Virus record (IMG/VR): IMGVR_UViG_3300023175_000005 | Location: 186,001 to 250,000 of that record | Length of the DNA stretch: 64,000 nucleotides | Strand: one strand, 5' to 3' | Shown: piece by piece, positions 2,903 to 50,889 of the stretch | Layout of the letters: the number at the start of each line of letters is the position of its first letter | How positions within the stretch are numbered: the stretch's first letter is position 1 | Made by a program: the position numbers and the translations under genes | The notes under the pieces: generated by a model | The model's database searches: none | Seen by the model: the letters and a program-made list of their open reading frames with translations, nothing else | What the model was told of the DNA's origin: nothing

Positions 2903-2910
2903 GAGAAAAA

Positions 2911-31366: not shown

Positions 31367-31378
31367 CCTTGTTGCGCC

Positions 31379-32299: not shown

Positions 32300-32588
32300 T
32301 TAATAAAGTACTCCATTTTTTTAATTTTTCACGTTTTTTGTTGGAACGTTCAGCAACTTCAACATGAGTAACAATTCCATGATCAATCATAAGTTCGATC
32401 ATACACTGCACATCGCCAATTTCTTCCATCAATTTAACACGCTGATCTTCTTCAATTAATTTAGTTGTAGCGTATTTCCGCATAATCTTACTACAACGTT
32501 GTGTAAGTTCTCCACATTCTTCCATAGTAATTGTCATTAGTTGTTGTAATTTGTTAATAGGACTTTCCATATTATACTCCAAATTCAA
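32292..32588 (-). CDS. MazG-like NTP pyrophosphohydrolase
   Basis: EECGEL...EEIGDV. Confidence 0.65.
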   Translation of the reverse strand: MNLEYNMESPINKLQQLMTITMEECGELTQRCSKIMRKYATTKLIEEDQRVKLMEEIGDVQCMIELMIDHGIVTHVEVAERSNKKREKLKKWSTLLNE

Positions 32589-37241: not shown

Positions 37242-38307
37242 TACAAGTACCTCTGAATTTATCTAAATGTTTTTGGTAACTCATGCCTTGTTCAAAGTGT
37301 TTTATATTACGTTCTCGAGTAACTGCCGGTAAGCTTCTTTTAAGATCTTTATACACATCGCATAAGTCTATATAAATTTGTTTATGATCATCAGGTGCAT
37401 GACACGGTGCAAATTCTTTAGGACTGTTCACAGGATAAACTTCCCATCTTTCAAAATTATTTGACATAATCCATTCACCTAGTGATTCCATATGTTTTAC
37501 GTTAATCCAACTTACAGTTGTACAGACATCACTTGTACCAATTTGTTGTGCTTTTGCAATGTTTTTTATAATTTTATCCCAATTGCTAGGATACCTAATA
37601 TATTCATTTATTTCTTTATAACCGTCAATGCTAAAATGCCACTCCACATCAAATTTTTCTAAAATTGAAAGTAGTTTAGTGGGTAAATTGTTTCCGTTTG
37701 TAGTTATACGTAAACTAGGTTTGCTATCATATACTAAAAGATATTCGCAAAACTTTTGAAGGTAATTGTTTACAGTTGGTTCTCCACCTGTGAAACGTAT
37801 TTCATCTCTATCGTGTAAAAATTCAGCAAGTTTTTGTAAATTGTTTTCGTCTTCATACCATACATCAAACGAATACTTGTGTCTTTGTATTAGTTTATGT
37901 TGTATACCTTGGCTATCTAGTTTTGTAAGTTCTGCATCTATAAGACTGCTGTTCACAGGACCGCACATTGAACACGAAAGATTACATTTGTTTCCAAATT
38001 TTATTTCAGCGTCTTTACGATTGTTTCTATACTTTCTTTCGCTTTGCAATCGTAAACTTTCAAAGCCGTAAGATTCTTCTTCTTTACAATCTCTACATCC
38101 TTCGGGAAATATTCCATTATCAAGATCTTTCTTAACACTTGCTAAAAAGTCACTGTCTTTGTATTTTTCAATATCTGAAACTTTTACAAGATCTTTTCTG
38201 TCGCGGTCGTCCCAATTACAGCAAGGGCGTAAATTACCCAAAGTATCCATGCTGATGTGATTATCTAGCCATTTACACTTCTTCGGAGAGTTCGAAGAGT
38301 TTGTCAA
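37225..38307 (-). CDS. Radical SAM/twitch protein (TTG start inferred)
   Basis: CKW...RPCC...CRDC; CNLSCSMC; TGGEP; TTNG; SIDG. Confidence 0.85.
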   Translation of the reverse strand: MTNSSNSPKKCKWLDNHISMDTLGNLRPCCNWDDRDRKDLVKVSDIEKYKDSDFLASVKKDLDNGIFPEGCRDCKEEESYGFESLRLQSERKYRNNRKDAEIKFGNKCNLSCSMCGPVNSSLIDAELTKLDSQGIQHKLIQRHKYSFDVWYEDENNLQKLAEFLHDRDEIRFTGGEPTVNNYLQKFCEYLLVYDSKPSLRITTNGNNLPTKLLSILEKFDVEWHFSIDGYKEINEYIRYPSNWDKIIKNIAKAQQIGTSDVCTTVSWINVKHMESLGEWIMSNNFERWEVYPVNSPKEFAPCHAPDDHKQIYIDLCDVYKDLKRSLPAVTRERNIKHFEQGMSYQKHLDKFRGTCIDMVF

Positions 38308-39394
38308 TTTCTCTGACTTTTCCACAGGATTTTCCGCACTGGACCCAGCATTGACTGATTGATTTTGATTGCCAACTGTCTGAATAAACTGCAAGTACGC
38401 CTCCGTCTATAATTTGATCAAGTCTATGATGATGTAAATTGTTAGCATCACCTAGTGCTTTTTGTAGTGTTTGCATTTCTCTTGCTTCAGGAACATATCT
38501 AGGACCTTGCATTTTATTTCCTATAAAGCAACAAGGATGAACTCTTCCCAATGCATCTATATATAGTTCAACCATTGGTTCTTCATGGTATGGATATGGC
38601 AAAGTTCTAAAACTATTACAGGCAATAACGCCTTCTTCTTTAACAGGTTCTGGCAAATCTGCTTCCCAACCTAATGGAGCAGGTGTATAATGGTCATGTC
38701 CGTAATCAGTAGCATGTTCTAACACATATTCTAAGTTATAGTCTTTGTCGTATGCAGGCATACCTGTTCCATCTACACCAAATGGATTTTTTAACACAAA
38801 ATTGATACCATTTTCTTCTGCAATTTTTCTACTGAGTTCAACTTGATGTTTGTTGTGTTTAAATTGTAAAAAGTCCCAATCAGTATGCGCACCTGTATAT
38901 GCATAGGCAATCATGTTATTCCATGCTTTATCCCAAATAACATTTCTTCTGTATATATGGTTAGTATCTTCTAAGCCGTCTATACTAAATGTAATTTTAC
39001 GCATTGGTTTTGGATCTAAACCATTTGTTGTTTCTATAAACAGTTCTCCTATTGCACGGAAATGATCCGGAGTACGCAAACCACCATTTGTGTTAATTTG
39101 TATAGTTGCTATACTGTTAGAGCATATATAATCTAATATATCATATATGTCATTACAGGCCAATGGATCTCCATGTGTTCCGCAAAATATCCAACTTTTA
39201 GATTTTTGTACAAGATCTAGTGGAAACCATCTTTTAAACAAATCAATTGTAATATCAGTCTGCACAACTTCCGGATCGACATTAGTGCTATTACGTAAGA
39301 ATCTTGGACAGCCTGGACACGCTGCGTTACAACGTGTACTTAATTCTACGTGGAAAGCATTTAAATCGTTATAATTCCATGCATTATACTTCAT
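38273..39394 (-). CDS. Radical SAM/SPASM protein
   Basis: CNAACPGC; CGTHGDP; TNG; SIDG; HPCC...CWVQC; TAAATAC-TAT-ATG start. Confidence 0.85.
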   Translation of the reverse strand: MKYNAWNYNDLNAFHVELSTRCNAACPGCPRFLRNSTNVDPEVVQTDITIDLFKRWFPLDLVQKSKSWIFCGTHGDPLACNDIYDILDYICSNSIATIQINTNGGLRTPDHFRAIGELFIETTNGLDPKPMRKITFSIDGLEDTNHIYRRNVIWDKAWNNMIAYAYTGAHTDWDFLQFKHNKHQVELSRKIAEENGINFVLKNPFGVDGTGMPAYDKDYNLEYVLEHATDYGHDHYTPAPLGWEADLPEPVKEEGVIACNSFRTLPYPYHEEPMVELYIDALGRVHPCCFIGNKMQGPRYVPEAREMQTLQKALGDANNLHHHRLDQIIDGGVLAVYSDSWQSKSISQCWVQCGKSCGKVREIDKLFELSEEV

Positions 39395-39420: not shown

Positions 39421-39855
39421 TTATGAAAACGCTAAATGACTATCTAAAGTAATGTGTTCAAAGCCTTGTAGTTCTTGTTTATAGGAATACAAATCTCCCA
39501 GTATCAAATAATTTAATCCTTGATCTCGAAAATAAGCACATTCGCTACGCAAGGATCTGTATCCTAATTTTAATTTTGGTGTTTTATAATTCCATGCAAA
39601 TTGATCGGCATGTGCTGTGCTCTTACTAGGATAAACCATATAGCAACTCCATGCTGCTAGTTCATCATTATCGTAATAACCAAAAACTGTACTCCTATCC
39701 CAGTCTTCTTTGAATATAGGATAAATTGTATCAAATTTTTTATATATTATATATTGTTTGTAAATTTGTTCACATTCTGCAAAGTGTGAACTGTCTAGTA
39801 GTTTAAAATCAATTGTTTTGTATTTTGTATTTTGTAAATCTATTCTACTTGTCAT
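39421..39855 (-). CDS. GNAT-fold protein resembling the ATE/Bpt aminoacyl-tRNA-protein transferase C-domain
   Basis: GYYD.DEL.A...FAWNY...KLG..SL..E...R..GLNYLILG..Y pattern. Confidence 0.4.
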   Translation of the reverse strand: MTSRIDLQNTKYKTIDFKLLDSSHFAECEQIYKQYIIYKKFDTIYPIFKEDWDRSTVFGYYDNDELAAWSCYMVYPSKSTAHADQFAWNYKTPKLKLGYRSLRSECAYFRDQGLNYLILGDLYSYKQELQGFEHITLDSHLAFS

Positions 39856-40367
39856 TCACCCACAACTTCGTTATAATAACCTTGGTCCCAATTCACGTAA
39901 TAGTTTTGTTTACGTAAAGACTTTCGTGCAAGTTCAAGTTTATCTTTTTGCTGCAAGAAACTTACAGCGTATTTACCGTTATTAAGAACTGTATTTTGTA
40001 CCTGTTCTTTTTCATTTGGATGATCTTCTAAAGCAATAAATCCTCTATTGTGTAGGAATTGGTCGTTTGCATGACCAACTGCACGTGATAGTTCTTCTGA
40101 TGAAATTAAAGTAGGGTCACAACCTAATATAACAACTTCTGTATTTTTAGGCCAATGATAAGAAAAATTTTCAAGTTCTGCTATAAAATAAGAACTCATA
40201 CTTATATTATAAATATCTTTTAATTCTACACACTTAATCTTGTCTTCTAGCATTGCTTGTTTAGCAAACGGACAAGGAGGAAGGTTATTAAATGTTTTAG
40301 AAGGTATGCTGAGAAAAGTTTCTATCCAGTTTTGTATATGTTGTTCAAACATAACATTACTTTGCAC
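39852..40367 (-). CDS. DUF1415-like protein
   Basis: WIETF...PCPFAK; EDHP; FLQ. Confidence 0.45.
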   Translation of the reverse strand: MQSNVMFEQHIQNWIETFLSIPSKTFNNLPPCPFAKQAMLEDKIKCVELKDIYNISMSSYFIAELENFSYHWPKNTEVVILGCDPTLISSEELSRAVGHANDQFLHNRGFIALEDHPNEKEQVQNTVLNNGKYAVSFLQQKDKLELARKSLRKQNYYVNWDQGYYNEVVGE

Positions 40368-40542
40368 CTTTAGTCATTGACTTTTTGCGGATAGTGGCAT
40401 AGTAAACATTTTCCCAATCTTTACCATACTGTTTTTTCATATTCTTTTTCATATCACCGTCGTCATACTTTTTCTTAAGTTTTGTTTCCTTAGACTTTTC
40501 AGCCCCGGTCATTTTACGTTCAGTGAATTCGTGAATACGCAT
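40357..40542 (-). CDS. Small basic probable internal head protein
   Basis: MRIHEFTE CTS-like N-terminus; Lys-rich. Confidence 0.5.
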   Translation of the reverse strand: MRIHEFTERKMTGAEKSKETKLKKKYDDGDMKKNMKKQYGKDWENVYYATIRKKSMTKGAK

Positions 40543-40544
40543 TA

Positions 40545-41441
40545 TTAATCACATTTACATGAGCCTGGTTCACCGCGTGGTACGCCTGCTACTTTACGAC
40601 AACCTTTCCAGCATTTATCATAAATTTTACTGTTGCCGTGACGCTTACCTTCTGGCAGATTTGCTAGTTCTTTTTTCTCTTGAGCAGTAAGCATTGTCTT
40701 GCCACATTCGTTACAAGTTTGTTCTTTCATTTTTTCAGCAAGCGTTGTTTTATAATCAGCTTTTGCTGCTTCGTCCATATTGCCTTTGAATGTTTTCTTT
40801 GACTCTCCCATCATATCATAATCTAGTGTATGATATACTGAGCCCATATAGTCTGCTGCTTTTGTGATTTTGCTTTGCATCCAACCTTCGATGCCCTCTG
40901 CCTCTGAAACACCTTTTAGCATTTCGTGTAGTTTAATTGCATACTTTGCAATTTTATAAAGTTCTGCACGAGCCATTTGTACTTCGTGATCACGTTCTGC
41001 AACACCTGCCATATCAGCCAAACCTTCTGTAACTGCATTGCAATTACAGTGTTTGCATGTTGGAGGACATGTGCAGTCTTCTGCTTTTACGTCTGAACCG
41101 CAGCATTTATCTGAACAATGTGTATCTTTTGCTTCAATCATGCCTTCGCTAGTACCACCTTTAGCAAGAGCAACTAATTCTTTAAAACGATCTACAGTAA
41201 ACTCACCTTGATCACGCATTGTTGTATATTCACTCATCGCATCTAGCAACTCTCTTGCGGTTGATACTTGCTGATTAGCAATTAGTGATCCCATATGATC
41301 TAATTGATTAAAATCAACATCATTCATAGGTGCGTTCTTGACGTTTTGAATACGTCTGCGAATCATTGGAAGCAGTGTCTTTGTCATTTGAGCGAACTGC
41401 ATCTGTGCTTTGTTTTTTGCTGCTTTATTCATTGTAGGCAT
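40545..41441 (-). CDS. Probable internal head polyprotein with Cys-rich modules
   Basis: Late promoter 41469-41474; repeated xxE/(A,G,S) junctions; HCSDKCC..CTCPPTCKHCNC. Confidence 0.5.
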   Translation of the reverse strand: MPTMNKAAKNKAQMQFAQMTKTLLPMIRRRIQNVKNAPMNDVDFNQLDHMGSLIANQQVSTARELLDAMSEYTTMRDQGEFTVDRFKELVALAKGGTSEGMIEAKDTHCSDKCCGSDVKAEDCTCPPTCKHCNCNAVTEGLADMAGVAERDHEVQMARAELYKIAKYAIKLHEMLKGVSEAEGIEGWMQSKITKAADYMGSVYHTLDYDMMGESKKTFKGNMDEAAKADYKTTLAEKMKEQTCNECGKTMLTAQEKKELANLPEGKRHGNSKIYDKCWKGCRKVAGVPRGEPGSCKCD

Positions 41442-41471
41442 CGGTGGCTCCGTTTTCTCTTGTTGTAGTAT

Positions 41472-41654
41472 TTATCGTTTCAGCAGTGATCCGCCAAATA
41501 ATGATACACCTTTCATATCCAATGCATTATCAGTTGGCTTTTGTTTTTTAGGTTTTCTTTTAGATTTTGCAACAGTTGGATTTACCACTGTTGATACACT
41601 TGATGTTCCCATTCCTGTTGCAACTTCATTTACTATAACATCTTTTATCTTCAT
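41472..41654 (-). CDS. Small basic probable internal head protein
   Basis: MKIKDVIVNE. Confidence 0.5.
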   Translation of the reverse strand: MKIKDVIVNEVATGMGTSSVSTVVNPTVAKSKRKPKKQKPTDNALDMKGVSLFGGSLLKR

Positions 41655-41656
41655 TG

Positions 41657-41926
41657 TCAAGTCCCTCCTACTAACTTTCCTCTTAAAGGATGTTTTGTTG
41701 TAGGACCTTTACCCGGCTTTGATTTCTTAGGCATTGGATCTTTGCCTTTAGCATGATCAGCATGTTTATATTCTTCATATGCCTTGCCTTTATGCTTTTC
41801 TTTCCGAGGTAGTACTTTCTTTTTATCTTTGTGAGCACCTGCTGCACCACTTTTGCGAATATCCTGCATAGTTTTACTGCTAGGATCTCTCTGTTTCACT
41901 GCTTCTAAAATATCTTGCATCTTCAT
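41657..41926 (-). CDS. Small basic probable internal head protein
   Basis: MKMQDILEA; KQ...GAGAHKDKK. Confidence 0.5.
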   Translation of the reverse strand: MKMQDILEAVKQRDPSSKTMQDIRKSGAAGAHKDKKKVLPRKEKHKGKAYEEYKHADHAKGKDPMPKKSKPGKGPTTKHPLRGKLVGGT

Positions 41927-42111
41927 TTGGCTCTCCTGAGGTCTGTAATGCCTGCGTTTTTACCGTATTGAGCATAAATGATGTTACGTGCTTCTCTGTT
42001 ATTTCTTGCGCTAACTTGGACAGGTATCCATTGTGTGTATGTACGCTGGCGCACTCGGACATTTGCTATCCAAACAGAAAATTGACTCTTTTTGACTTCT
42101 CTTATTAGCAT
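41923..42111 (-). CDS. Small basic protein, probable leaderless late gene
   Basis: MLIREV; TAAATAC-ATT-ATG. Confidence 0.55.
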   Translation of the reverse strand: MLIREVKKSQFSVWIANVRVRQRTYTQWIPVQVSARNNREARNIIYAQYGKNAGITDLRRAK

Positions 42112-42118
42112 AATGTAT

Positions 42119-42952
42119 TTATCTTAAACCTTTTAAGTTCTTCACAGTTCTTTCAAACTTGTGATCTTTGTGTTTAAAGCCGATGCCGCCTGCTTCAGAC
42201 CATTTGTTAATGTTAACACCATAATCGTCGATTAGAATATTTGCAGAACCGTCTGAGTTCGTAGCATACTGTGCTTTGTCGTGTGTTAAAAATATTCTTC
42301 TAGGTGGAAAAAATGACAAATTTTTCTTGATCCATTCCTTTTTATGTGGAATACTTTTAGGATCATCAGCAAGCGGACTGCTTAATATATTATAACTGCC
42401 TTTGACACGCTTGATTAACATTAACAAAGGCTTTGCATTTTTTGTAAGAGGTAAATTTAACCAAAAATCATCTACTGTTTTAATTTTATTAATTGCATTA
42501 GCAGGATCTTCGATATCAGTCCAGTGTTTTTTGTTCATTAATTTAGCCCAATCGCCAAAAAAGTCAGCAAGTACACCGTCCATGTCTACGTAAATTTCAG
42601 TATTAGGACCTATATTTTCTAGTTCTTCTACTAGTTCATTGTTATATGCAAGCCATGCGATTTCACTTCCGTGTCCTTTTGGCCATGAATGTTCTTCCGG
42701 TAGGCTATGCCCGCCCTCCATCAGTGCAAGTTCATATGCACTATAGGTTTTTTCTGCTAGTCCTAAATTAAAAAGTACGTTAGTAGATTTACCTTTTACT
42801 TTAGTTGATAGTGTAGGTGGACGTCCGTTTTTATCTACAGTATTACCAAATTTTGCTGCTTGCTTTGGTATTTCGTCTACGTCTACATCAGGAGTAGTGT
42901 TAACTCCTTTTACAATACGTCCATCTTCTTTTAAAAATTCAAATAGTTTCAT
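42119..42952 (-). CDS. HAD 5'(3')-deoxyribonucleotidase (NT5C-like) fused to a CTS-like leader
   Basis: MKLFEFLKE; YVDMDGVLADF; K..WI; LIDD. Confidence 0.75.
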   Translation of the reverse strand: MKLFEFLKEDGRIVKGVNTTPDVDVDEIPKQAAKFGNTVDKNGRPPTLSTKVKGKSTNVLFNLGLAEKTYSAYELALMEGGHSLPEEHSWPKGHGSEIAWLAYNNELVEELENIGPNTEIYVDMDGVLADFFGDWAKLMNKKHWTDIEDPANAINKIKTVDDFWLNLPLTKNAKPLLMLIKRVKGSYNILSSPLADDPKSIPHKKEWIKKNLSFFPPRRIFLTHDKAQYATNSDGSANILIDDYGVNINKWSEAGGIGFKHKDHKFERTVKNLKGLR

Positions 42953-43059
42953 TCACAATTACACTTCGTACATACATCGTTTACACAGTCTTTACAATCG
43001 GGTTGATAGCAATGGCATTTATGCCCACAACTTTTGCAAGTTCTTCTTTCGCCCTTCAT
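42949..43059 (-). CDS. Unannotated 36-aa Cys-rich peptide (9 Cys, 2 His)
   Basis: MKGERRTCKSCGHKCHCYQPDCKDCVNDVCTKCNCE; ATGA overlaps at both ends. Confidence 0.7.
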   Translation of the reverse strand: MKGERRTCKSCGHKCHCYQPDCKDCVNDVCTKCNCE

Positions 43060-43268
43060 TTCTTTCTCCCTCTAAATTGCACGGGACCTGTCATATAAGG
43101 TTTTGAAAACCATAGTTTAAACCAATCTTCGTCTCCTGGCTTAAGACCCATTTCGCGTTCTTTCTTTTTTAGAGCAGCCGCAGTTTTATCTGGACTTTCT
43201 ATTTTATATTCTGTATAGCCTTGGAATTCATTAATTCCTGCCAGCTTCTTTAGATCTTCTATGTTCAT
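43056..43268 (-). CDS. Small probable internal head protein
   Basis: MNIEDLKKLAGINE. Confidence 0.55.
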   Translation of the reverse strand: MNIEDLKKLAGINEFQGYTEYKIESPDKTAAALKKKEREMGLKPGDEDWFKLWFSKPYMTGPVQFRGRKK

Positions 43269-43461
43269 CCCAGTATTTGTTTCTTTCGTTTGTGCTTGTT
43301 CTGTTTTCTTCGTGTTGTTTATATTTGGCTATATAGTGTGCCCATTCTATGTCATCGATACTCATATCTTCGTGTTCTCTCCACGTTTTGCTATACCCAT
43401 CTGGGTATTCTTCTGCCCAGTCTATTTTTTCTTTTTGCCCGACTTCATGTTTGCGCACCAA
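43231..43461 (-). CDS. Hypothetical protein
   Basis: 76 aa, overlaps neighbours. Confidence 0.45.
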   Translation of the reverse strand: MVRKHEVGQKEKIDWAEEYPDGYSKTWREHEDMSIDDIEWAHYIAKYKQHEENRTSTNERNKYWDEHRRSKEAGRN

Positions 43462-45506
43462 TGATACATCCTCGCTTTTTCACCACTACTATTTTTAGCC
43501 CTCTTGCGTAGTGCTGTAACACTACCATTACAACTAGCACCTGAACGCTTTACACGCCCTGGTCTGCTTTTGCCTTTTACTTTACCATCAGCAAAGTTTT
43601 CATTCATTCCAAGTTGATCAACCATTATTTCTAACGCTGAATCTACATCATTTAAACCATTTTCTTCTTTTGTTTTCTCATACCAACTTCTTACAAAGTT
43701 TGATGCTGCGTGTCCATAAGTATCTGGCGCCATCATCATTTGATAAAGAACTTGATCAGGTGCTTCTCGTTGAGACCTAACAAATTTTCTAAGACTATCT
43801 AAGTCTGTACTTTCATTATATGCTATATTTGTTGCTGCTTTTGCTTTTGCACCGTGTGGATGTTTAGGATTTATACCCACAGGTTCGCCATTTATAAGTT
43901 GTGAAATATCTACACTCTTGCCTAGTCTATCTAGCAGTTGATGTAATTTGTCAGTGGGATCGTAATTACCGCTTTCATAACCACTTTTACCACGCACTTC
44001 GGTACGTTTACCTGTAGCAGTATCTACAATGTGTAGTATCATTAGATCGCCGTCACGTTCTAATGTTAGTTTGTAACCTTCAGTAATTTTTTTTTTGGGT
44101 TTTGTCTTTTTTGGCTTTTCGTCTGAACTATGACCAAAATACTTGTGAACTAATTTGTCTAGTTTTCTATGGAATTCATCTTCTTCATCCGGAGAAGCAT
44201 CTTCAGATATGTCAATTGATTCGTCGGCCATCTTTTTAACAAGTTCGTCACCTTTTTTCGTAAAGAATTTTTGTAGGGCAACACCTCCTAAGATCAATAT
44301 TACTGCCATCATAATACTAAACTTGTTTGCAACAAGGAATTTAACCATTTCAGCACCAAGTATACTTTCAACCCAGTCCCATCCTTTTTTAGCATAATAT
44401 GCCGCTGTGCCGCCTATTGCTATTTTGCCGCCATGCCGTCTAATTGCCCATTTGACTACAGGAACTGCGCCTCTCCTTGCAGCCCATCCTAAAACCCAAC
44501 CTGCTGCTTTTGCACCTGCCCATAATACTGCTGGTGCAATTTCATTAACTTGTTGTTCATTGACATTATCTGCCATTCTGATACTGTGTTTTATGCCAAT
44601 ATTGTTAAAAAGTTTACTTGCATTTTGCACACTTGTTAGTGCTCTTTTCATTCTATCTTGATATTTAGGATTGTTATCAAACTTTGAAATAAATTTCTTT
44701 GCTTCATCAGGTTTAACATATATAAGTTTGCCACTCCATGCAGCACCTTTCCTATAAAAACTTAAAAAATGTTCTTTACCGTCTGCGCGATCTGCAATCC
44801 AACTTAGTACTTTAATTTTATTAGGATCTTGGCTTTTTATACTTGTATTATCGTTACCTAAACCAAATAATTCTTTAACACTTTCTTCTGCTGGTGCTTC
44901 AGTATCTCCTAATGCTTGATTAAGTAGTTTTACAGCAACAGGAGCACCATTACCGTACATAAGTTTTGCGGCTTTTAATTTATCTTCGTCTGACATTTCA
45001 GGCCATGTTGCTCTAAGTTCACTAGCACTCTTAATTTGTATACCTGAAAAACCAAAATCTATAGTAGGACCATAGGCCATATAGCCCATTTCATCACTAG
45101 TTCTAAGATTTTTTCCTTTGTATGACCTTAAATAACCAGGCTCACCATTCTTCTTTGTTTGATCTGGCAACGGTTGTTCGCCTTTGTCTTTTAGACTTCG
45201 TACAAATACTATTGCTGCATCGTCTCCTAACATGTCTTTATAACTGTTTAAGTTAAAAGGTGACTTGACTTGTATAAAACGCTCTGCAGGAACTCCTGCC
45301 ATACTAGCAAGTTTCTTTTTTACATCGAAAGGAAATGGTCTAGTTTTAGTGTCTGCTGTTGCAGCAACATATACATTTTCACTGCCAAATGTTTTTGTTG
45401 CCCAATCATATAAACTTTTGTGACCAGGATGAAAAGGATGAAATCCTCCAGGCATAATTGCAACAATTCGTCTTGCCTGTGCTTCAAATAGGTCACGGAC
45501 GAACAT
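43422..45506 (-). CDS. Modular probable internal head polyprotein with N-terminal HIGH-type nucleotidyltransferase domain
   Basis: MFVRDLFEA start (TAATG); PGGFHPFHPGH and SASELR; several xNE/xTE junctions. Confidence 0.6.
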   Translation of the reverse strand: MFVRDLFEAQARRIVAIMPGGFHPFHPGHKSLYDWATKTFGSENVYVAATADTKTRPFPFDVKKKLASMAGVPAERFIQVKSPFNLNSYKDMLGDDAAIVFVRSLKDKGEQPLPDQTKKNGEPGYLRSYKGKNLRTSDEMGYMAYGPTIDFGFSGIQIKSASELRATWPEMSDEDKLKAAKLMYGNGAPVAVKLLNQALGDTEAPAEESVKELFGLGNDNTSIKSQDPNKIKVLSWIADRADGKEHFLSFYRKGAAWSGKLIYVKPDEAKKFISKFDNNPKYQDRMKRALTSVQNASKLFNNIGIKHSIRMADNVNEQQVNEIAPAVLWAGAKAAGWVLGWAARRGAVPVVKWAIRRHGGKIAIGGTAAYYAKKGWDWVESILGAEMVKFLVANKFSIMMAVILILGGVALQKFFTKKGDELVKKMADESIDISEDASPDEEDEFHRKLDKLVHKYFGHSSDEKPKKTKPKKKITEGYKLTLERDGDLMILHIVDTATGKRTEVRGKSGYESGNYDPTDKLHQLLDRLGKSVDISQLINGEPVGINPKHPHGAKAKAATNIAYNESTDLDSLRKFVRSQREAPDQVLYQMMMAPDTYGHAASNFVRSWYEKTKEENGLNDVDSALEIMVDQLGMNENFADGKVKGKSRPGRVKRSGASCNGSVTALRKRAKNSSGEKARMYHWCANMKSGKKKK

Positions 45507-45859
45507 TAGTACTCTCCGTTGCGGAAGTTTTCTATTTCGCCTCTTAGTATTTGATCGATTACCATCATCTTTTCTTCTCTTGTACACATCTCTTCGGGCA
45601 TTTTTTTGATTTTAAATTTATTAACATATTCTTTTATAGCACATTCGACAGTAGGAAGTAAAGACTTTTTATCGTATCTTTTGCCTTTTTTTACAACTTC
45701 TTGTACATCACACATTTTTGGATATAACTGGCGTCTATAAAATTCAGGATCATTCTTCATATACACCACTAAATCGTCAACAACGTTAAACGGAAGTTTA
45801 TCTCCCGTTTTTGTATCCATGTCTTGGCTAAGATCGTGAAACTCGTTGATTTTTACCAT
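45506..45859 (-). CDS. Hypothetical protein
   Basis: MVKINEFH; coupled at both ends. Confidence 0.6.
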   Translation of the reverse strand: MVKINEFHDLSQDMDTKTGDKLPFNVVDDLVVYMKNDPEFYRRQLYPKMCDVQEVVKKGKRYDKKSLLPTVECAIKEYVNKFKIKKMPEEMCTREEKMMVIDQILRGEIENFRNGEY

Positions 45860-46611
45860 TTGCGGCAACTCCAGTAACGTGCTTTTGTTCTTGGTCCTGG
45901 ATTATCACAGTTATGTCTAGCACGGAATGAACGTCTACGTGCTGGGTTAGACTTTTTGATCTTCATGTTTGGATCACCAAAGTTAACTTTCTTAATATTT
46001 TTAGTCTTTGGATCTCTTACATATACTTTGAACTTTTTAACATCGCCGCGCATAGGTTTGCCAAGTTTAACTTTGCGTCCTTGATATTCAGCTTCGTCCA
46101 TTGATTTTCTATCACGTCTTAATTCTAAATATTTTGTTCCACTAGTTGCTACCATACCCATTGCTTTTGCATCGTTTTGTGCTTGCATTTTATTTGTTAT
46201 TGGATAGCTTTTTTTAACTTCTAGTGTTCCTGGATCATAGACAATATACATATTTCTATATTTTTCAAACTCTGATCTTTCTTCTAAACCTTCATCTTCA
46301 TCTTCGTTGAACCACATGACACCGTAGTTTTCAAAAAACTCGTCGCCGTCATATGTTTCTTCAATATCTGAAATTTCTTCGTTAGCAGATATTTCAATAT
46401 CAAAGTCGTCATAACCTTGTTCAAACATATAATTTGCTAGGTGCTCTGCATATCCATCTGCTTCTTCTTCTGATAATTCCCTAGATAGAGGAATTTCAAA
46501 AACTGTTGCACCCTGTTCTGATTCAAAAATGTCGTTGCCTGGAAAAATTGACTCATCTAACTTTTCAGCAATATCAGTTTTTTCCATGACTACTCGGATA
46601 AAATGTTCCAT
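45853..46611 (-). CDS. Probable late/head protein, acidic N-half and basic C-terminal module
   Basis: Late promoter 46640-46645; MDEAEYQGRKV...RYWSCRKW. Confidence 0.55.
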   Translation of the reverse strand: MEHFIRVVMEKTDIAEKLDESIFPGNDIFESEQGATVFEIPLSRELSEEEADGYAEHLANYMFEQGYDDFDIEISANEEISDIEETYDGDEFFENYGVMWFNEDEDEGLEERSEFEKYRNMYIVYDPGTLEVKKSYPITNKMQAQNDAKAMGMVATSGTKYLELRRDRKSMDEAEYQGRKVKLGKPMRGDVKKFKVYVRDPKTKNIKKVNFGDPNMKIKKSNPARRRSFRARHNCDNPGPRTKARYWSCRKW

Positions 46612-46638
46612 GATCGATCCTTTGTAAATTTACTAATA

Positions 46639-47337
46639 CTATTTATCTAGATCGTGTTTGTAAATTAGTTTATCGATCCTTGAAATATTACCACCTGCAA
46701 GTAGTTCAAACAATGTAAGTGCTTTGTCGTTCTTAATATAAACGTATTGCCCTTTTATCCAGTTTTTGTTTTTTATTTTTTGTAACAGTTTAGTGCCGCA
46801 TTTGCATAAATTAGGATTTTTTACAATCCAATTAGCCATTTCAGGATTAACATTCTTGCCACCAAATGTAACTTTATAATCAAACTCTGTTTCTTTGTTA
46901 ACAATAATTACATTTTTATTATTTTGCAAATATTCTATCATATCAGGACTCGGCTTCCAAACTTTAATGTAGTCTGCTGATAAAGTATTGGCTAATTTGT
47001 CTATCAAACTCTCGTTGTTTGAATAAATGTTTAAGAAACTTTGCTCTATTCTAACAGTATAGTCTGTTTCATGCATTAGATTGGTAATGATTCTTTCGAC
47101 ATCTAATATCTCATTAGTATCAATAGAAATATGTGAGTGACCAAATCTTGCGTTTACTTGAAATGTTTTACTTCCAGGAAAAATTCTTGCTTTAAATGAA
47201 TTAAGTTCTCGTCTTGCGTACTGAAAGTTTTTCCCGTGCTGTATTTCAGTACGCAATATATGTGCTATATAAAGTCTTGTTTCTAATTTATATAGATATT
47301 TGTTATAATGTAGTTTTGTAGTCTCAGCTTGTTGCAA
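46639..47337 (-). CDS. Hypothetical protein
   Basis: 232 aa, coupled to clpA. Confidence 0.6.
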   Translation of the reverse strand: MQQAETTKLHYNKYLYKLETRLYIAHILRTEIQHGKNFQYARRELNSFKARIFPGSKTFQVNARFGHSHISIDTNEILDVERIITNLMHETDYTVRIEQSFLNIYSNNESLIDKLANTLSADYIKVWKPSPDMIEYLQNNKNVIIVNKETEFDYKVTFGGKNVNPEMANWIVKNPNLCKCGTKLLQKIKNKNWIKGQYVYIKNDKALTLFELLAGGNISRIDKLIYKHDLDK

Positions 47338-49573
47338 TTACAGTACTCTCAACATTTAAGACGATGTCTTTGCCTTTTGCGTTGATTGATAGTTTACCAC
47401 CGTCTTTCAAATCACCAAACAATAGCATTCTTGACAAAGGACGTTTAATATCTTTGTCAATAACACGCTGTAATGGTCTTGCACCCATTTTACGATCAAA
47501 GCCTTTGTCTACTAACAAATCTAATGCTTCGTCTGTAACAGAAACTTCTACGTTTTTATCCGCAACTTGATCTTTAAGTTCTTTTAAGAACTTGCCAACA
47601 ATTTTTAACATCACAGGCTTACCAAGTTTAGCAAACGTAATAACGCCATCTAGCCTATTTCTAAACTCTGGTGCAAAGAATTTTTTCAATTCGCCATCTT
47701 CGTAGTCAGAACCGTCTGATTCTTCACCAAATCCGATAGCATTTTTCTCTGCTTCTCTTGCACCAAGATTTGTTGTTAGGATTAGGATACTGTTACGTGC
47801 ATCTGCTTCCTTACCGTTGCTGCCAGTGATCATACCGTTGTCCATAAGTTGCAATAAAACATTACTTACATCTGGGTGTGCTTTTTCAATTTCATCTAGC
47901 AACAACACACAGTTGGGATTTTCTTGCAGTTTGATAATCAACTGTCCTGCATCGTCTTCAAATCCTACATAACCTGGAGGTGCACCGATAAACTTTGCAA
48001 CACTATGCTTCTCTTGATATTCACTCATATCAAATCGTACAAGTTGTACACCTAAATGATGTGCAAGTTGTTTTGCTGTTTCTGTTTTACCTGTACCTGT
48101 CGGACCCATAAACACAAATGATCCAATCGGTTTATCTTCTGGTTTAAGTCCTGCTTGCGAAACAAGTATTTTATCAACAATACCTTCGATTGCTTCGTCT
48201 TGACCGTAAACACTACCTTTCATATTAGTTTCTAAATTAGCAAGATTTTCTGTCTCACGTTCTGCAACTTGCTCTTTTGGTATTTTAACCATTTTTGCAA
48301 GTTCAAATTGAATACTTTCTTCTGTGACAATTTTATTTTCTGTCTGATTATTGACCTTGAACCTACTACATGCAACATCAATAACATCAATTGCTTTGTC
48401 AGGTAGTTTTTTATCTGCTTGATATTTGATTGTAAGTTTTACTGCTGCTTCAATTGCTTCATCTGTAATTTCTACAGTATGAAATTCTTCATAATATTTC
48501 TTAATACCATGTAAAATATCTTTTGTAATTTCTGCACTCGGCTCGTCAACAGTTACACGCTGGAATCTTCTCATAAGCGCACGATCTGATTCGAAGTACT
48601 TGCGGTACTCTTCCCAAGTAGTTGAAGCAACAACTTTGATATTACCTTTAGACAATGCAGGTTTTAACATATTTGCTAAATCATTTGCACTATTACTTCC
48701 ACCTGCGCCAGCGCCACTAATCATGTGTGCTTCGTCAATAAACATAATAGTTTTGCCTTTTTTCTGTAGTGCAGATAACACAAGTTTAAAGCGTTCTTCA
48801 AAGTCGCCGCGGTATTTTGAACCTGCAAGCATACTGCCGATATCAAGTGCATAAACATTGTATTCTTTTAAAAACTCTGGAACATCGTTGTTTACAATTT
48901 TCCATGCTAAACCTTCAGCAATAGCAGTTTTACCCACACCTGGATCGCCGACCATAAGCACATTTGATTTTGTGCGGCGTCCTAGTGCAAGTGCTAGTGA
49001 TTCTATTTCGTCTTCCCGTCCGATAACAGGATCTATACGACCTTTTTTAACATCGGCATTGAGATCGTCAGTAAATGCTTTTAATGCTTTGTTAGCAATA
49101 CCAGCATTTTCCATGTCTTCGTCTGCTACTATATCTAATTCAAGTTCTGCACTCATATATTGGATAAACTTATCTTTCTGAATGCCTGCTTGTTGACATG
49201 CAAAGAACGCATAACTTCTTTTTTCGCTTAATGTACTAATAAAAACATCAGTAATTTCGATTTGATTGCGTCCTTGAAATAATACTTGTGCAAAAGCTCG
49301 ATTTAAAACCCGCTCAACAGTGCCTGTCTTAACAGGTTTATATTTTTTTGCTTCTGTTTTAATTTCGTTTAATTTTGTTTTGAGATAATTTTCTACATTC
49401 TTTTTCAATAGGTCTACATCTGTATCAAACCCTTTTAATGCTGTAGAAAATTGTTCTTCACACAGCATTGCAAACAGAAGATGTTCAAGAGTAACATATT
49501 CATGCTGTAATTTCTTTGCGTCTTTAACTGCCTTATCAAATACTACTTGTAATGCTTGGCTAGGTTCTACCAT
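47324..49573 (-). CDS. clpA: ATP-dependent Clp protease ATP-binding subunit
   Basis: N-domain EHLL; GDPGVGKT; FIDEAH; GPTGTGKT; LLLDEIEKAH; IGF ClpP-docking loop; GARPL. Confidence 0.93.
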   Translation of the reverse strand: MVEPSQALQVVFDKAVKDAKKLQHEYVTLEHLLFAMLCEEQFSTALKGFDTDVDLLKKNVENYLKTKLNEIKTEAKKYKPVKTGTVERVLNRAFAQVLFQGRNQIEITDVFISTLSEKRSYAFFACQQAGIQKDKFIQYMSAELELDIVADEDMENAGIANKALKAFTDDLNADVKKGRIDPVIGREDEIESLALALGRRTKSNVLMVGDPGVGKTAIAEGLAWKIVNNDVPEFLKEYNVYALDIGSMLAGSKYRGDFEERFKLVLSALQKKGKTIMFIDEAHMISGAGAGGSNSANDLANMLKPALSKGNIKVVASTTWEEYRKYFESDRALMRRFQRVTVDEPSAEITKDILHGIKKYYEEFHTVEITDEAIEAAVKLTIKYQADKKLPDKAIDVIDVACSRFKVNNQTENKIVTEESIQFELAKMVKIPKEQVAERETENLANLETNMKGSVYGQDEAIEGIVDKILVSQAGLKPEDKPIGSFVFMGPTGTGKTETAKQLAHHLGVQLVRFDMSEYQEKHSVAKFIGAPPGYVGFEDDAGQLIIKLQENPNCVLLLDEIEKAHPDVSNVLLQLMDNGMITGSNGKEADARNSILILTTNLGAREAEKNAIGFGEESDGSDYEDGELKKFFAPEFRNRLDGVITFAKLGKPVMLKIVGKFLKELKDQVADKNVEVSVTDEALDLLVDKGFDRKMGARPLQRVIDKDIKRPLSRMLLFGDLKDGGKLSINAKGKDIVLNVESTVIATS

Positions 49574-50084
49574 TTTTGTTCCTTTTTGCTTGCTTTTTTA
49601 AACCCATGTTAAGTTTTAGTCTGCTAACTCTATTAATGAATTGTATTCCTTGTAAGTGATCATATTCGTGTAAAAATATTCTACTGTCAATATCATTAAA
49701 TTTTGTCTCTACATGTATAACATCTTTATAGTCATTTGTCAACGTATCAAATTCAACAACACAACTAATTGGACGTCTTACTTTAAGTGTCAACCCCGGA
49801 TGGCTTAAACACCCTTCAATTCCTTCTTCTAATTCTTTACTAATACCTTTAATGTGCGGATTTATTACAACGATTGTATCGCCGTATTTTTTATTTAACA
49901 AACATTTCATAACAAATATCTGCCCATTTATTCCCACTTGATTTGCTGATAATCCTAACCCTCCTTCCTTTTGCATTAATTCAATCATTTCAAATGCAAG
50001 AGGTCTTGGATTGTCTGTAGCCAAATCAAACTTTGGAACAGGATTTTCTAGTCTTGTATCAGGCGCTACGATTAATTGCATCAT
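49560..50084 (-). CDS. def: Peptide deformylase
   Basis: [21 protein letters not shown]. Confidence 0.93.
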
Positions 50085-50889
50085 TTATTAATTTTACCTT
50101 TTCTAGCATATTAGGATCTTTTATTTTTGGTGTAATACCTTTCAACTTTACATATAAATTTCCTGTACGTCCTGTATTAAGTTCTGGCAAACCTTTTCCA
50201 GATATACTTAATATAGTACCTGGGTTTGTTCCTGCAGGGATATTCAATCTAACCATGCCTCCTTCTAGAGTTGGAATGTTTTTAGTTGTACCTGCTATAA
50301 ATTCCAATAAATTGACCTTTTCTTCAATATGTAAGTGTGCATTATCCCTTCTAAACCTAGGATGTTTAACAATGGCTATTTGCATAATCAAGTCACCTCT
50401 AGGTAAACTATGTGCAGAGTGATCTCCTAATCCTCTGTATCTCATTAATTGACCATCCATTACACCAGGAGCAATTCTAATACTTGCACTTGTTTCTACA
50501 CCATTCAACATATTATAAGTTGCAAGAAAATCTTTACCTCGTAAAACATCTTCTAGTGTGAGACTTACCCGCAACCTAATATCTTTGTTTCTGACTGCAC
50601 GATGTTGTTGTGCAAAACCTTGTCCAAACATACTGCCAAAAATATCATTAAAATTACCGAAGTTATCAGTAAACGCATTACCTTGAAAATTATTATTAGT
50701 TGCAGGATTGTCATACAACGATCTTTTTTCAGGATCTTTTAACGTATCATATGCTTCGTTAATTTGAGCGAACTTTTTGCCATCACCACCCTTGTCAGGA
50801 TGGTGTTGCATTGCAAGTTTTCTATATGCTTTCTTTAATTCGTCTGACGTGGCGTCTTTGTTTACACCCAGTACGCTGTAATAGTCCAT
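50059..50889 (-). CDS. DnaJ-class II/CbpA-like chaperone (no Zn finger)
   Basis: J-domain with HPD, G/F-rich linker, DnaJ C-terminal domains. Confidence 0.9.

What the first reader, a model, noticed from the sequence alone, without database searches (positions are those of the whole stretch)
39421..50889. Possible phage-encoded N-degron/proteostasis pathway: ClpA + peptide deformylase + DnaJ + ATE/Bpt-like transferase
Seen: adjacent dnaJ-def-clpA (ClpA keeps the IGF ClpP-docking loop) and, about 7.5 kb away, a GNAT-fold protein resembling the ATE/Bpt C-domain. No clpS or clpP in the window. Established: PDF unmasks N-termini, Bpt/Aat add destabilising residues, and ClpS-ClpAP degrade. Inference: the phage redirects host ClpP to selected host (defence) or phage proteins.
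Basis: partly seen in the sequence, partly recalled or inferred. Interest (0 to 1): 0.6.

Follow-up and report, generated by a model that had tools for sequence, protein, structure and literature searches.

The report
Phage Clp operon plus ATE-like module
A salt-marsh jumbo phage carries a conserved chaperone-deformylase-ClpA operon, and its relatives also carry ClpS and ClpP; the nearby arginyltransferase-like gene is real but sits in a separate two-gene cassette with a haem enzyme, so one pathway linking all four genes is not supported.

Summary
The ClpA keeps the IGF ClpP-docking tripeptide, and the 144-aa protein is a true but minimal ATE_C homologue.

The region holds two separate units.

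1. dnaJ-def-clpA-orf232 is an operon with overlapping reading frames. DnaJ lies directly upstream of clpA in 67/67 related viral loci. PDF sits between them in 50/67. The same trio occurs in Sinorhizobium phage Phosso. Near-complete relatives and Phosso also encode ClpS, and most encode ClpP. The window's own record is about 72% complete; a separate 79.6-kb contig probably holds its clpS and clpP. "Redirecting host ClpP" is therefore probably unnecessary.

2. The ATE_C-like gene lacks ATE_N, the domain that recognises acidic N-termini. It keeps the catalytic Lys and an Arg-type acidic pocket residue. In 73/74 evaluable loci it lies next to a 166-aa protein with the thiolate-haem "sandwich" fold (AglA / cytochrome P422 / DUF1415-like, invariant Cys-Pro). 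Both genes are missing together from complete genomes that have ClpS and ClpA.

The closest precedent is AglC/AglA of argolaphos biosynthesis: Arg-tRNA-dependent amide formation followed by N-hydroxylation. A link between the transferase and Clp degradation remains possible (about 10%).

The parts
50059..50889 (-). Class-B (CbpA/Sis1-like) J-protein: J-domain with HPD, G/F-rich linker, DnaJ C-terminal domains, no zinc finger. First gene of the operon.
   Evidence: Pfam DnaJ and DnaJ_C; NCBIfam CbpA-like full-length match; translation. Directly upstream of clpA in 67/67 related loci. Adjacent to clpA in Phosso, Atu_ph07 and PA5oct.
49560..50084 (-). Peptide deformylase with intact metal-binding and catalytic motifs. 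Overlaps dnaJ by 26 nt and clpA by 14 nt.
   Evidence: Pfam Pep_deformylase E 2e-34; motifs read. Present between dnaJ and clpA in 50/67 loci and in Phosso.
47324..49573 (-). ClpA-type double AAA+ unfoldase with Clp_N domain, IGF ClpP-docking loop and conserved ClpS-contact residues (E25, E30, T83, R88).
   Evidence: The E. coli contact residues are taken from PMC12493166.
46639..47337 (-). orf232, a conserved unknown. Overlaps the clpA stop by 14 nt and lies directly downstream of clpA in 80/80 related loci. Probably the fourth operon member.
   Evidence: No Pfam or PDB sequence match.
39852..40367 (-). Partner of the ATE-like gene: 166-171-aa protein (GTG at 40367 or ATG at 40352) with the predicted thiolate-haem sandwich fold (AglA / cytochrome P422 / DUF1415-like). 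Invariant Cys27-Pro28, Asp110, Arg143.
   Evidence: Alignment A2. AF2 model pLDDT 95. The only standout PDB match is AglA 9ub3, Z 6.5 over 155 residues. Atlas TM 0.82-0.84 to DUF1415/DUF6875 clusters. Weak Pfam DUF6875/DUF1415 hits. Literature.
39421..39855 (-). Minimal ATE_C-only GNAT, a putative aminoacyl-tRNA-dependent transferase. Its start overlaps the partner's stop by 4 nt.
   Evidence: Residue mapping onto K. lactis Ate1.
37225..39394 (-). Two radical SAM genes (38273-39394, twitch/SPASM-like; 37225-38394) immediately downstream of the ATE-like gene. Present only in the closest relatives. Possibly an add-on to the cassette.
32572..35268 (-). Family-B DNA polymerase. This is context only: it anchors the synteny and places the phage next to Phosso and Atu_ph07.

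Best explanation
The 11.5-kb span holds two functionally separate units of a salt-marsh jumbo myovirus related to Sinorhizobium phage Phosso and Agrobacterium phage Atu_ph07.

Unit 1 is the dnaJ-def-clpA-orf232 operon, whose reading frames overlap. It encodes a class-B J-protein (inferred to recruit host DnaK), an active-looking peptide deformylase (inferred to process the flood of phage nascent chains) and a true ClpA. The ClpA keeps its ClpP-docking loop and its ClpS-binding surface. Relatives encode their own ClpS and ClpP, and this genome's missing part probably does too. The lineage therefore most likely runs its own ClpS-ClpAP protease for quality control or selective removal of proteins during infection.

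Unit 2 is a two-gene cassette. One gene encodes a thiolate-haem oxygenase-like protein of the AglA / cytochrome P422 / DUF1415 fold. The other encodes an ATE_C-only GNAT. The GNAT keeps the catalytic Lys and aromatic residues of aminoacyl-tRNA transferases and an Ate1-like acidic pocket residue, which suggests a basic donor such as Arg. It lacks the ATE_N acceptor pocket. By analogy with AglC/AglA, it most likely transfers an aminoacyl (arginyl?) group from a charged tRNA to an amine acceptor, and the haem partner then oxidises the product or its precursor. The acceptor is unknown.

Shown: gene identities, motifs, synteny and co-distribution. Inferred: all activities, the donor amino acid, and the order of the steps.
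For: Unit 1:
- Gene identities and motifs.
- DnaJ upstream of clpA in 67/67 loci, PDF in 50/67, orf232 downstream in 80/80.
- The same trio in Phosso, and the dnaJ-clpA pair in Atu_ph07 and PA5oct.
- IGF conserved in 83/84 phage ClpAs.
- ClpS-contact residues conserved.
- ClpS in G006 (100% complete), G007 (93%), G009 and Phosso; ClpP in G006, G009 and Phosso.
- G016 comes from the same sample as a contig identical to the window locus. It carries hsp20-clpS and clpP, shares no gene content at its ends with G000, and has tetranucleotide r 0.988 to G000. Completeness is 27% for G016 and 72% for G000.

Unit 2:
- ATE_C homology at family level.
- The best structural neighbours are the C-terminal GNAT domains of aminoacyl-tRNA transferases: MprF/aaPGS Z 15.0, FemX 14.7, Sba18/Sbb17 13.2.
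- W88, Y125 and K126 are invariant across the wider family; S101 and E105 are invariant in the viral family A1, and E105 is kept in 12 of 14 of the wider set. They align with K. lactis Ate1 W260, S273, E277, Y303 and K304.
- The partner gene is adjacent in 73/74 evaluable loci, including lineages where the gene order differs and nothing else is shared.
- Both genes are present together in 3 of 3 records searched with both profiles, and absent together in 5 of 5.
- Partner fold and Cys-Pro motif.
- AglC/AglA and P422 precedents.
Against: - No biochemical data exist for any of these proteins.
- P0001 alone is below the Pfam ATE_C threshold.
- The Ate1 residue mapping rests on a profile alignment with E 0.016.
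- The AglA structural match is modest (Z 6.5, 9% identity), and the partner profile finds no PDB relative by sequence.
- Plain acetyltransferases score only about 2-3 Z units below the tRNA-dependent enzymes.
- The complex prediction for the GNAT-partner pair gave no verdict.
- The assignment of G016 to this genome is circumstantial.
- GNAT-bearing genomes of this lineage do also carry clpA about 7.5-10 kb away (16 of 21 loci with full flanks), so a functional link cannot be excluded.
Confidence: 0.6

Rival explanations
1. The ATE-like enzyme adds a destabilising or pre-destabilising residue to protein N-termini. The haem partner possibly oxidises the N-terminal residue first, as in the eukaryotic Cys/Arg branch. 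ClpS-ClpAP then degrades the marked proteins.
For: - The protein is a true ATE_C homologue with the catalytic Lys and an Arg-type pocket.
- The lineage has ClpA with a ClpS-binding surface, and relatives have ClpS and ClpP.
- The GNAT and clpA sit within 10 kb in the same direction in 16 of 21 loci with full flanks.
- The genome encodes tRNA-Arg and tRNA-Leu.
Against: - There is no ATE_N domain, so the R80-type pocket for acidic N-termini is missing.
- The complete genomes G006 and G007, plus Phosso and Atu_ph07, have the Clp genes but neither the GNAT nor its partner.
- In distant lineages the pair sits beside baseplate genes with no clpA on the contig.
- N-terminal Arg is not read by bacterial ClpS without Aat (established knowledge), and no Aat was found.
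Confidence: 0.12
2. Phage ClpA acts without any ClpP. In this view it is an unfoldase or assembly chaperone working with the J-protein on virion or replication complexes, as suggested for jumbo-phage ClpA/ClpX by Iyer et al. 2021.
For: - The dnaJ-clpA pairing is invariant.
- No clpP is present in the 256-kb record or in the 93%-complete G007.
- The literature suggestion is in PMC7824862.
Against: - The IGF ClpP-docking tripeptide is kept in 83/84 homologues across very distant phages.
- ClpP and ClpS are encoded by relatives.
Confidence: 0.15
3. The 144-aa protein is an ordinary acyl-CoA N-acetyltransferase. Its ATE_C resemblance would then be only shared GNAT fold.
For: - It is a single GNAT domain of typical acetyltransferase size.
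- Plain GNATs reach Z 11-12.6.
- Four family members weakly hit Acetyltransf_1.
Against: - ATE_C is the dominant family hit (22/27).
- The wider family passes the ATE_C threshold.
- The residues invariant in the family coincide with Ate1/FemX catalytic and donor-pocket residues.
- The sequence after beta-4 shows no R/Q-x-x-G-x-G/A pyrophosphate-binding motif (read; the motif is from general knowledge).
Confidence: 0.06
4. The GNAT-haem cassette acts on a cell-envelope or lipid amine, in the manner of FemX or MprF. It would aminoacylate peptidoglycan precursors or lipids to alter the host surface, for example for superinfection exclusion.
For: - The top structural neighbours are MprF/aaPGS and FemX.
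- In one lineage the cassette sits beside baseplate genes.
Against: - There is no membrane domain and no second GNAT domain, both of which those enzymes have.
- The sequence family is ATE_C, not FemAB or DUF2156.
- This reading gives the haem partner no obvious role.
Confidence: 0.07

Closest known systems
Bacterial Leu/N-degron system: ClpS-ClpAP with Aat/Bpt (E. coli, Vibrio, Agrobacterium)
   Same: The ClpA architecture matches, with the ClpP loop and the ClpS-contact residues. It also keeps the ExxExK ClpA-binding helix. The best PDB match of the ClpS is A. tumefaciens ClpS2.
   Different: The system is encoded by a virus. No Aat and no canonical Bpt are present. ClpS and ClpP are not on the window's own record. 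ClpA is fused into an operon with a J-protein and PDF, an arrangement I do not know from bacteria.
dnaJ-(def)-clpA cassettes of cultured jumbo phages (Phosso PV764938, Atu_ph07, PA5oct); survey by Iyer et al. 2021 (PMC7824862)
   Same: Gene order and orientation are the same. Phosso has the identical trio plus two ClpP genes and ClpS. The DNA polymerase is closest to Phosso (50% identity) and Atu_ph07 (46%).
   Different: Those phages lack the ATE-like/haem cassette. No function has been tested in any of them. The survey lists ClpA, ClpP, ClpS and DnaJ separately, not as a conserved operon.
Ate1 / Bpt aminoacyl-tRNA-protein transferases
   Same: The ATE_C core is shared. W88, S101, E105, Y125 and K126 align with KlAte1 W260, S273, E277, Y303 and K304. 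The acidic pocket residue is like Arg-specific Ate1 rather than Leu-specific Bpt, which has Gln there.
   Different: Only 144 aa. No ATE_N domain, no metal-binding Cys motif and no R80 acceptor pocket. The gene is obligately paired with a haem-protein gene. The family is almost entirely viral, with one cluster of about 3,700 members.
AglC + AglA of argolaphos biosynthesis (Streptomyces monomycini)
   Same: The same pairing of enzyme types. AglC makes AMPn-Arg with ArgRS and tRNA, and the cluster's GNAT-family proteins are described as peptide aminoacyl-tRNA ligases. AglA, a Cys-ligated haem sandwich-fold enzyme, then N-hydroxylates the arginyl amide.
   Different: The cluster's GNAT-type ligase listed (AlpF) is 342 aa and of the FemAB-like family (PF13480); AglA's counterpart there (AlpD) is a 274-aa YqcI/YcgG protein. 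The phage proteins are much smaller. They are related to AglA only at fold level (Z 6.5) and lie in the ATE_C branch of the GNATs. There is no phosphonate pathway nearby.
Cytochrome P422 (DUF6875) and DUF1415 proteins
   Same: Predicted fold: TM 0.82-0.84 to Atlas clusters carrying these families. There are weak direct Pfam hits. The Cys-Pro of the haem-binding motif is conserved.
   Different: The full RxGxVCP motif and the Trp-binding motifs are not recognisable. No haem binding has been shown. The substrate is unknown.

Membership tests
ClpA (Clp/Hsp100 class I, ClpP-coupled) | Clp_N domain plus two AAA+ modules, with no ClpB-type middle domain | tested here: met
   Pfam domain order. Gap-poor full-length alignment to E. 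coli ClpA, residues 6-731 against 4-734. TIGR02639 covers 3-733 of 734 positions, but the score of 880 bits is below its equivalog cut-off of 993.
ClpA (Clp/Hsp100 class I, ClpP-coupled) | IGL/IGF ClpP-docking tripeptide in the D2 loop | tested here: met
   IGF aligns with E. coli IGL. It is conserved in 83/84 phage homologues.
ClpA (Clp/Hsp100 class I, ClpP-coupled) | Physical and functional coupling to a ClpP | not testable with these tools
   Needs biochemistry. ClpP is encoded in relatives but not in the held record.
Peptide deformylase | Three catalytic and metal-binding motifs (GxGxAAxQ-like, EGCLS, HExxH) | tested here: met
   Read directly from the translation. Pfam E 2e-34.
Class-B J-domain protein (CbpA/Sis1 type) | J-domain with HPD, G/F-rich linker and C-terminal substrate-binding domains, without the CxxCxGxG zinc finger | tested here: met
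Ate1/Bpt aminoacyl-tRNA-protein transferase | ATE_N domain with the positively charged acceptor pocket (KlAte1 R80) for acidic N-termini | tested here: not met
   The protein starts at the point corresponding to the end of ATE_N. No ATE_N match was found anywhere in the record. Pocket location is from PMC9351520.
Ate1/Bpt aminoacyl-tRNA-protein transferase | ATE_C domain above the Pfam gathering score | tested here: inconclusive
   P0001 scores 17.4 bits against a cut-off of 25. 22 of 27 relatives hit ATE_C. Longer homologues reached by the family profile pass the cut-off.
Ate1/Bpt aminoacyl-tRNA-protein transferase | Catalytic Lys (the FemX K305 equivalent) and the donor amino-acid pocket | tested here: met
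   K126, Y125 and W88 are invariant in the wider family. S101 and E105 are invariant in the viral family. They align with KlAte1 K304, Y303, W260, S273 and E277.
Ate1/Bpt aminoacyl-tRNA-protein transferase | tRNA-dependent aminoacyl transfer to a protein N-terminus | not testable with these tools
   Needs an enzyme assay.
Thiolate-haem sandwich-fold oxygenases (YqcI/YcgG-AglA, cytochrome P422/DUF6875, DUF1415) | Central four-stranded sheet flanked by helices, in the AglA order | tested here: met
   The model's secondary-structure order a1-a2-b1-a3-b2-a4-b3-b4-a5 matches the description of AglA. AglA is the only PDB match that stands out (Z 6.5, 155 aligned residues). TM 0.82-0.84 to DUF1415/DUF6875 Atlas clusters.
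Thiolate-haem sandwich-fold oxygenases (YqcI/YcgG-AglA, cytochrome P422/DUF6875, DUF1415) | Conserved axial Cys in a Cys-Pro haem-binding motif near the N-terminus | tested here: inconclusive
   Cys27-Pro28 are invariant in 29 sequences, at a position comparable to AglA Cys44 and P422 Cys58. No residue-level structural alignment was available, and the rest of the RxGxVCP motif is not kept.
Thiolate-haem sandwich-fold oxygenases (YqcI/YcgG-AglA, cytochrome P422/DUF6875, DUF1415) | Sequence-family membership (Pfam gathering score) | tested here: not met
   Only sub-threshold hits: DUF6875 in 7/29 members (best E 0.0045) and DUF1415 in 5/29. No PDB relative by sequence.
Complete phage-encoded Leu/N-degron pathway (ClpS + ClpA + ClpP + N-terminal transferase in one genome) | All components on one genome | tested here: not met
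   G000 has ClpA and the ATE-like gene but no ClpS or ClpP in its 256 kb. G006 and Phosso have ClpS, ClpA and ClpP but no ATE-like gene. The link from G016 to G000 is circumstantial.

The most novel reading that the evidence does not exclude
The ATE_C-only enzyme and its thiolate-haem partner form a virus-encoded, oxygen- or haem-dependent N-terminal tagging step. The haem enzyme would oxidise a residue and the transferase would arginylate it, analogous to the eukaryotic Cys/Arg branch. That step would feed the phage's own ClpS-ClpAP. It would be the first complete N-degron pathway encoded by a virus, and the first bacterial-world arginyl-transferase.
Probability: 0.08. Interest if true: 0.9.

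Novelty: new variant of a known kind. Interest (0 to 1): 0.6.

Why it matters
First, a whole clade of environmental and cultured jumbo phages carries a conserved J-protein-(PDF)-ClpA operon, with ClpS, ClpP and a small heat-shock protein elsewhere in the genome. These phages appear to bring their own regulated proteolysis machine rather than only borrowing the host's. Phosso on Sinorhizobium is a culturable system in which this could be tested by deletion and substrate trapping.

Second, the short ATE_C-only proteins form a very large, almost purely viral family; one Atlas cluster has about 3,700 members. They are tied to a newly recognised class of Cys-ligated haem enzymes. If they are tRNA-dependent, they would be the smallest known members of the Ate1/Bpt/FemX group. 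They would also add a new way in which phages draw on charged tRNA for chemistry outside translation.

Tried and rejected
- Complex prediction of the GNAT with its partner gave "no answer" (score 0.00). This is not evidence for or against binding.
- The partner profile against PDB sequences returned only a chance-level row.
- tblastn of the GNAT against 50,697 cultured-phage records found no match.
- orf232 has no Pfam or PDB relative.
- The genes upstream of two longer ATE_C homologues (L088, L089) are not homologues of the haem partner. One of them belongs to a third family, orf218.
- I tried to show clpS on the 362.8-kb GNAT-bearing contig. The contig is not held for genome searches. The ClpS word search listed no row from it among the best 120. 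The exact look-up of the G016 ClpS found nothing.
- I looked for physical overlap between G016 and G000. There was no blastn hit and only one weak tblastx hit. The join is therefore unproven.
- I searched five distant GNAT-bearing records for ClpA and found none. They are only 11-21% complete, so the absence says little.
- I considered that nearly invariant Arg4 of the GNAT might stand in for KlAte1 R80. I rejected this because R80 lies well before the Cys95/96 motif, inside ATE_N proper.
- Ate1 chains did not reach the top 50 of either VIA list. Foldseek did rank them at E 2.5e-4 to 9e-4.

Full report
**What the window is.** The window is bases 186,001-250,000 of a 256,558-bp IMG/VR virus record. 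CheckV estimates it at 72% complete, and GC is 35.5%. Nearly identical DNA occurs in many salt-marsh metagenomes. Every gene between 28 and 64 kb lies on the minus strand. The family-B DNA polymerase at 32572-35268 is closest to Sinorhizobium phage Phosso (50%) and Agrobacterium phage Atu_ph07 (46%), followed by other 350-kb T4-like jumbo phages. This is a jumbo myovirus, and its host is probably an alphaproteobacterium. The host is an inference.

**Checking the observation.** The four genes are real and correctly placed.
- 50059-50889 is a class-B J-protein. It has a J-domain with HPD, a G/F-rich linker and DnaJ_C, and no zinc finger.
- 49560-50084 is a peptide deformylase with its three catalytic motifs intact.
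- 47324-49573 is a full-length ClpA. It scores 880 bits to TIGR02639 and E 1e-197 to E. coli ClpA. Both Walker A/B pairs are present, and IGF aligns exactly with the E. coli IGL ClpP-docking tripeptide.
- 39421-39855 encodes a 144-aa protein whose only Pfam hit is ATE_C, below threshold (E 0.007).
- No ClpS, ClpP, Aat or ATE_N is detectable in the held 256 kb.

**The Clp unit is an operon, and an old one.** The reading frames overlap. dnaJ and def overlap by 26 nt, def and clpA by 14 nt, and clpA and the next gene (orf232, 46639-47337) by 14 nt.
- I fetched 80 viral contigs encoding ClpA at 69-100% identity. In the 67 with enough upstream sequence, a DnaJ homologue lies directly upstream in 67/67.
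- PDF lies between dnaJ and clpA in 50/67. In the other 17, dnaJ abuts clpA.
- orf232 follows clpA in 80/80. It has no recognisable family.
- Phosso has the identical DnaJ-PDF-Clp order. Atu_ph07 and Pseudomonas phage PA5oct have DnaJ-ClpA. Xanthomonas phage XaC1 has ClpA alone.
- The IGF tripeptide is kept in 83 of 84 of these phage ClpAs; XaC1 has VGF.
- The four E. coli ClpA residues that contact ClpS are E23, E28, T81 and R86 (PMC12493166). They are E25, E30, T83 and R88 here.

**ClpS and ClpP are in the lineage after all.** I searched near-complete relatives.
- G006 (357,559 bp, 100% complete) has ClpS and ClpP.
- G007 (330 kb, 93%) has ClpS.
- G009 (180 kb) has both.
- Phosso has ClpS and two ClpP genes. 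One of them is annotated as an "ATPase domain-containing Clp family protein".
- The phage ClpS proteins keep the NDDxTPM and His pocket motifs and the ExxExK helix that binds ClpA. The pocket residues are recalled from memory; a paper search for them found nothing.
- The best solved relative of the ClpS is A. tumefaciens ClpS2.

For the window's own phage the evidence is indirect.
- The sample that yields a contig identical to the window locus also yields a 79.6-kb viral contig, G016 (27% complete). G016 carries hsp20-clpS and, 26 kb further on, clpP.
- The ends of G016 share no genes with G000.
- Its tetranucleotide profile correlates with G000 at r 0.988, against 0.93-0.94 for G006 and G007.
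- Four independent contigs of this phage type all stop about 20 kb beyond clpA. That points to an assembly break there.

I conclude, with moderate confidence, that this phage has its own ClpS and ClpP. Phage-encoded ClpP, ClpS, ClpA/ClpX and DnaJ have been listed before, each separately (PMC7824862). ClpA is a core gene of another aquatic large-phage lineage (PMC12619734).

**The ATE-like gene is a real ATE_C homologue.**
- 26 relatives at 42-94% identity were found. 22 of the 27 family members hit ATE_C, best E 1.4e-7.
- A profile search of 1.8 billion representatives found 170 clusters. These include 225-275-aa proteins that pass the ATE_C gathering score but show no ATE_N.
- The Atlas places the protein in almost purely viral clusters, one with about 3,700 members.
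- The AF2 model is confident (pLDDT 93) and is a single GNAT domain. Its best structural neighbours are the C-terminal GNAT domains of aminoacyl-tRNA transferases: MprF/aaPGS at Z 15.0, FemX at 14.7 and Sba18/Sbb17 at 13.2. Ordinary acetyltransferases follow only 2-3 Z units behind.

The conserved residues are more telling. I placed the profile alignment to K. lactis Ate1 on that paper's numbering. W88, S101, E105, Y125 and K126, all invariant in the viral family, then coincide with Ate1 W260, S273, E277, Y303 and K304. K304 is the counterpart of the catalytic FemX Lys305. E277 is the single charged residue of the Arg-binding pocket, and Leu-specific Bpt has Gln there. W88, Y125 and K126 stay invariant in the wider family, and E105 is kept in 12 of 14. 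A plain acetyltransferase is therefore unlikely, and a basic donor amino acid such as Arg is a reasonable guess.

The protein nevertheless lacks ATE_N. In Ate1 and Bpt that domain holds the positively charged pocket (R80) which recognises acidic N-termini. A defining feature of the N-degron transferases is thus tested and not met.

**What the ATE-like gene travels with.**
- Of 80 viral loci carrying it, 73 have a homologue of the upstream gene 39852-40367 next to it.
- Six of the other seven are cut off at a contig end. That leaves 73 of 74 evaluable loci.
- The link holds in distant lineages where nothing else of the neighbourhood is shared. There the order (GNAT-orf218-partner) or the orientation differs, and baseplate genes follow.
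- Both profiles ring in all positive-control records. Neither rings in G006, G007, G009, Phosso or Atu_ph07. The two genes are gained and lost together, independently of clpS, clpA and clpP.
- clpA lies within 10 kb of the GNAT only in loci of the window's own lineage, where the whole region is syntenic.
- A third family, orf218, joins the cassette in 26/80 loci. It also sits next to a 274-aa ATE_C homologue elsewhere. It is absent from this genome. Here two radical SAM genes follow instead, and only in the closest relatives.

**What the partner is.**
- Its model is confident (pLDDT 95). It shows a four-stranded sheet flanked by helices.
- The only PDB match that stands out is AglA (9ub3), at Z 6.5 over 155 of 166 residues; the next best is 4.7.
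- AglA is a Cys-ligated haem enzyme of the YqcI/YcgG family with exactly this "sandwich" topology.
- Atlas models of DUF1415/DUF6875 clusters superpose at TM 0.82-0.84. Some family members weakly hit those Pfam families.
- DUF6875 has just been characterised as cytochrome P422. These are thiolate-haem amino-acid hydroxylases with a conserved Cys-Pro haem motif.
- The partner family has invariant Cys27-Pro28 at the matching place.
- In a 362.8-kb relative a PhyH dioxygenase precedes the partner. In Roseobacter phage CRP-810 a partner homologue overlaps a 2OG-Fe(II) oxygenase.

**Most likely mechanism of the cassette.** In argolaphos biosynthesis AglC makes an arginyl amide in a reaction that needs ArgRS and tRNA. 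The cluster's GNAT-family proteins are described as peptide aminoacyl-tRNA ligases. AglA then N-hydroxylates the guanidine of that amide. The phage cassette pairs the same two enzyme types, and its GNAT has an Arg-type pocket. I therefore propose a tRNA-dependent aminoacyl (arginyl?) transfer to an unknown amine, coupled to haem-dependent oxidation. This is inference. The acceptor could still be a protein N-terminus.

**Weak expression evidence.** Contigs from four salt-marsh metatranscriptome libraries match at 100% identity. They cover the radical SAM genes, the GNAT, the 3' end of the partner and genes further upstream. DNA carry-over cannot be excluded.

**Verdict.** The ATE-like gene, however, belongs to a different, novel cassette. 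Its link to degradation is unsupported but not excluded (about 10%). PDF is a facultative operon member. By established knowledge it does not create ClpS-type N-degrons. It may instead serve bulk maturation of phage proteins.

Noticed in passing
window 37225-39394 (-): Two radical SAM genes, one twitch/SPASM-like, lie immediately downstream of the ATE-like gene. They are present only in the closest relatives (L002-L006). Weak homologues lie a few kb from the cassette in two distant loci (L066, L073).
   Followed up: partly
window 46639-47337 (-): orf232 overlaps the clpA stop and follows clpA in 80/80 related loci, yet it is only 25-41% conserved and matches no family. It could be an adaptor, a regulator or a substrate of ClpA.
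   Followed up: partly
window 51298-52787 (-): A DUF6071/GDSL-like protein and a class-3 lipase lie just upstream of dnaJ (one small ORF, 50913-51308, between).
   Followed up: no
window 54348-55205 (-): An endolysin-like protein with a glycoside hydrolase 19 core and a peptidoglycan-binding domain.
   Followed up: no
window 42119-45587 (-): An NT5C-type 5'-nucleotidase (42119-42952) and a 721-aa protein with only a cytidylyltransferase-like N-terminal segment (43422-45587).
   Followed up: no
window 29615-31807 (-): A sugar-nucleotide gene set next to the DNA polymerase: an epimerase/dehydratase, a phosphomannomutase and a heptose adenylyltransferase-like protein. The 362.8-kb relative adds a UDP-glucose dehydrogenase and a PRPP synthetase (L180).
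   Followed up: no
G000 6514-6690 (outside the window): The only two tRNA genes of the record are tRNA-Leu(TAA) and tRNA-Arg(TCT). These are the donor tRNA types of Bpt/Aat and Ate1. They are also the usual AT-rich-codon tRNAs of low-GC phages, so this is probably coincidence.
   Followed up: no
L201 (G016) 153-3267; also L177-L179: In relatives clpS is preceded by an Hsp20 small heat-shock gene and a nitroreductase. A haem oxygenase-like gene lies next to clpS or one gene away; it was judged from its sequence only, not scanned.
   Followed up: partly
L076 5358-6014; L045-L059; L089 809-1447: A third unknown family, orf218, is wedged into or beside the ATE-like cassette in 26/80 loci. It also sits next to a 274-aa ATE_C homologue (32% identity, E 1e-28). 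It is absent from this genome.
   Followed up: partly
L180 8819-9511; L087 2938-3504: A PhyH or 2OG-Fe(II) dioxygenase gene directly precedes the haem-partner homologue, both in a 362.8-kb relative and in Roseobacter phage CRP-810.
   Followed up: no
Contig ends of G000, G008, IMGVR_UViG_3300022934_002389 and 3300023108_001314: Four independent assemblies of this phage type all stop about 20 kb beyond clpA. This suggests a repeat, a hypervariable stretch or a genome terminus there.
   Followed up: no
L082 1480-2157 (Phosso PV764938 115020-115697): The Phosso gene annotated 'ATPase domain-containing Clp family protein' is actually a ClpP-type protease (PF00574, E 2.8e-26). Phosso has a second, better-scoring ClpP at 30245-30790.
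   Followed up: yes
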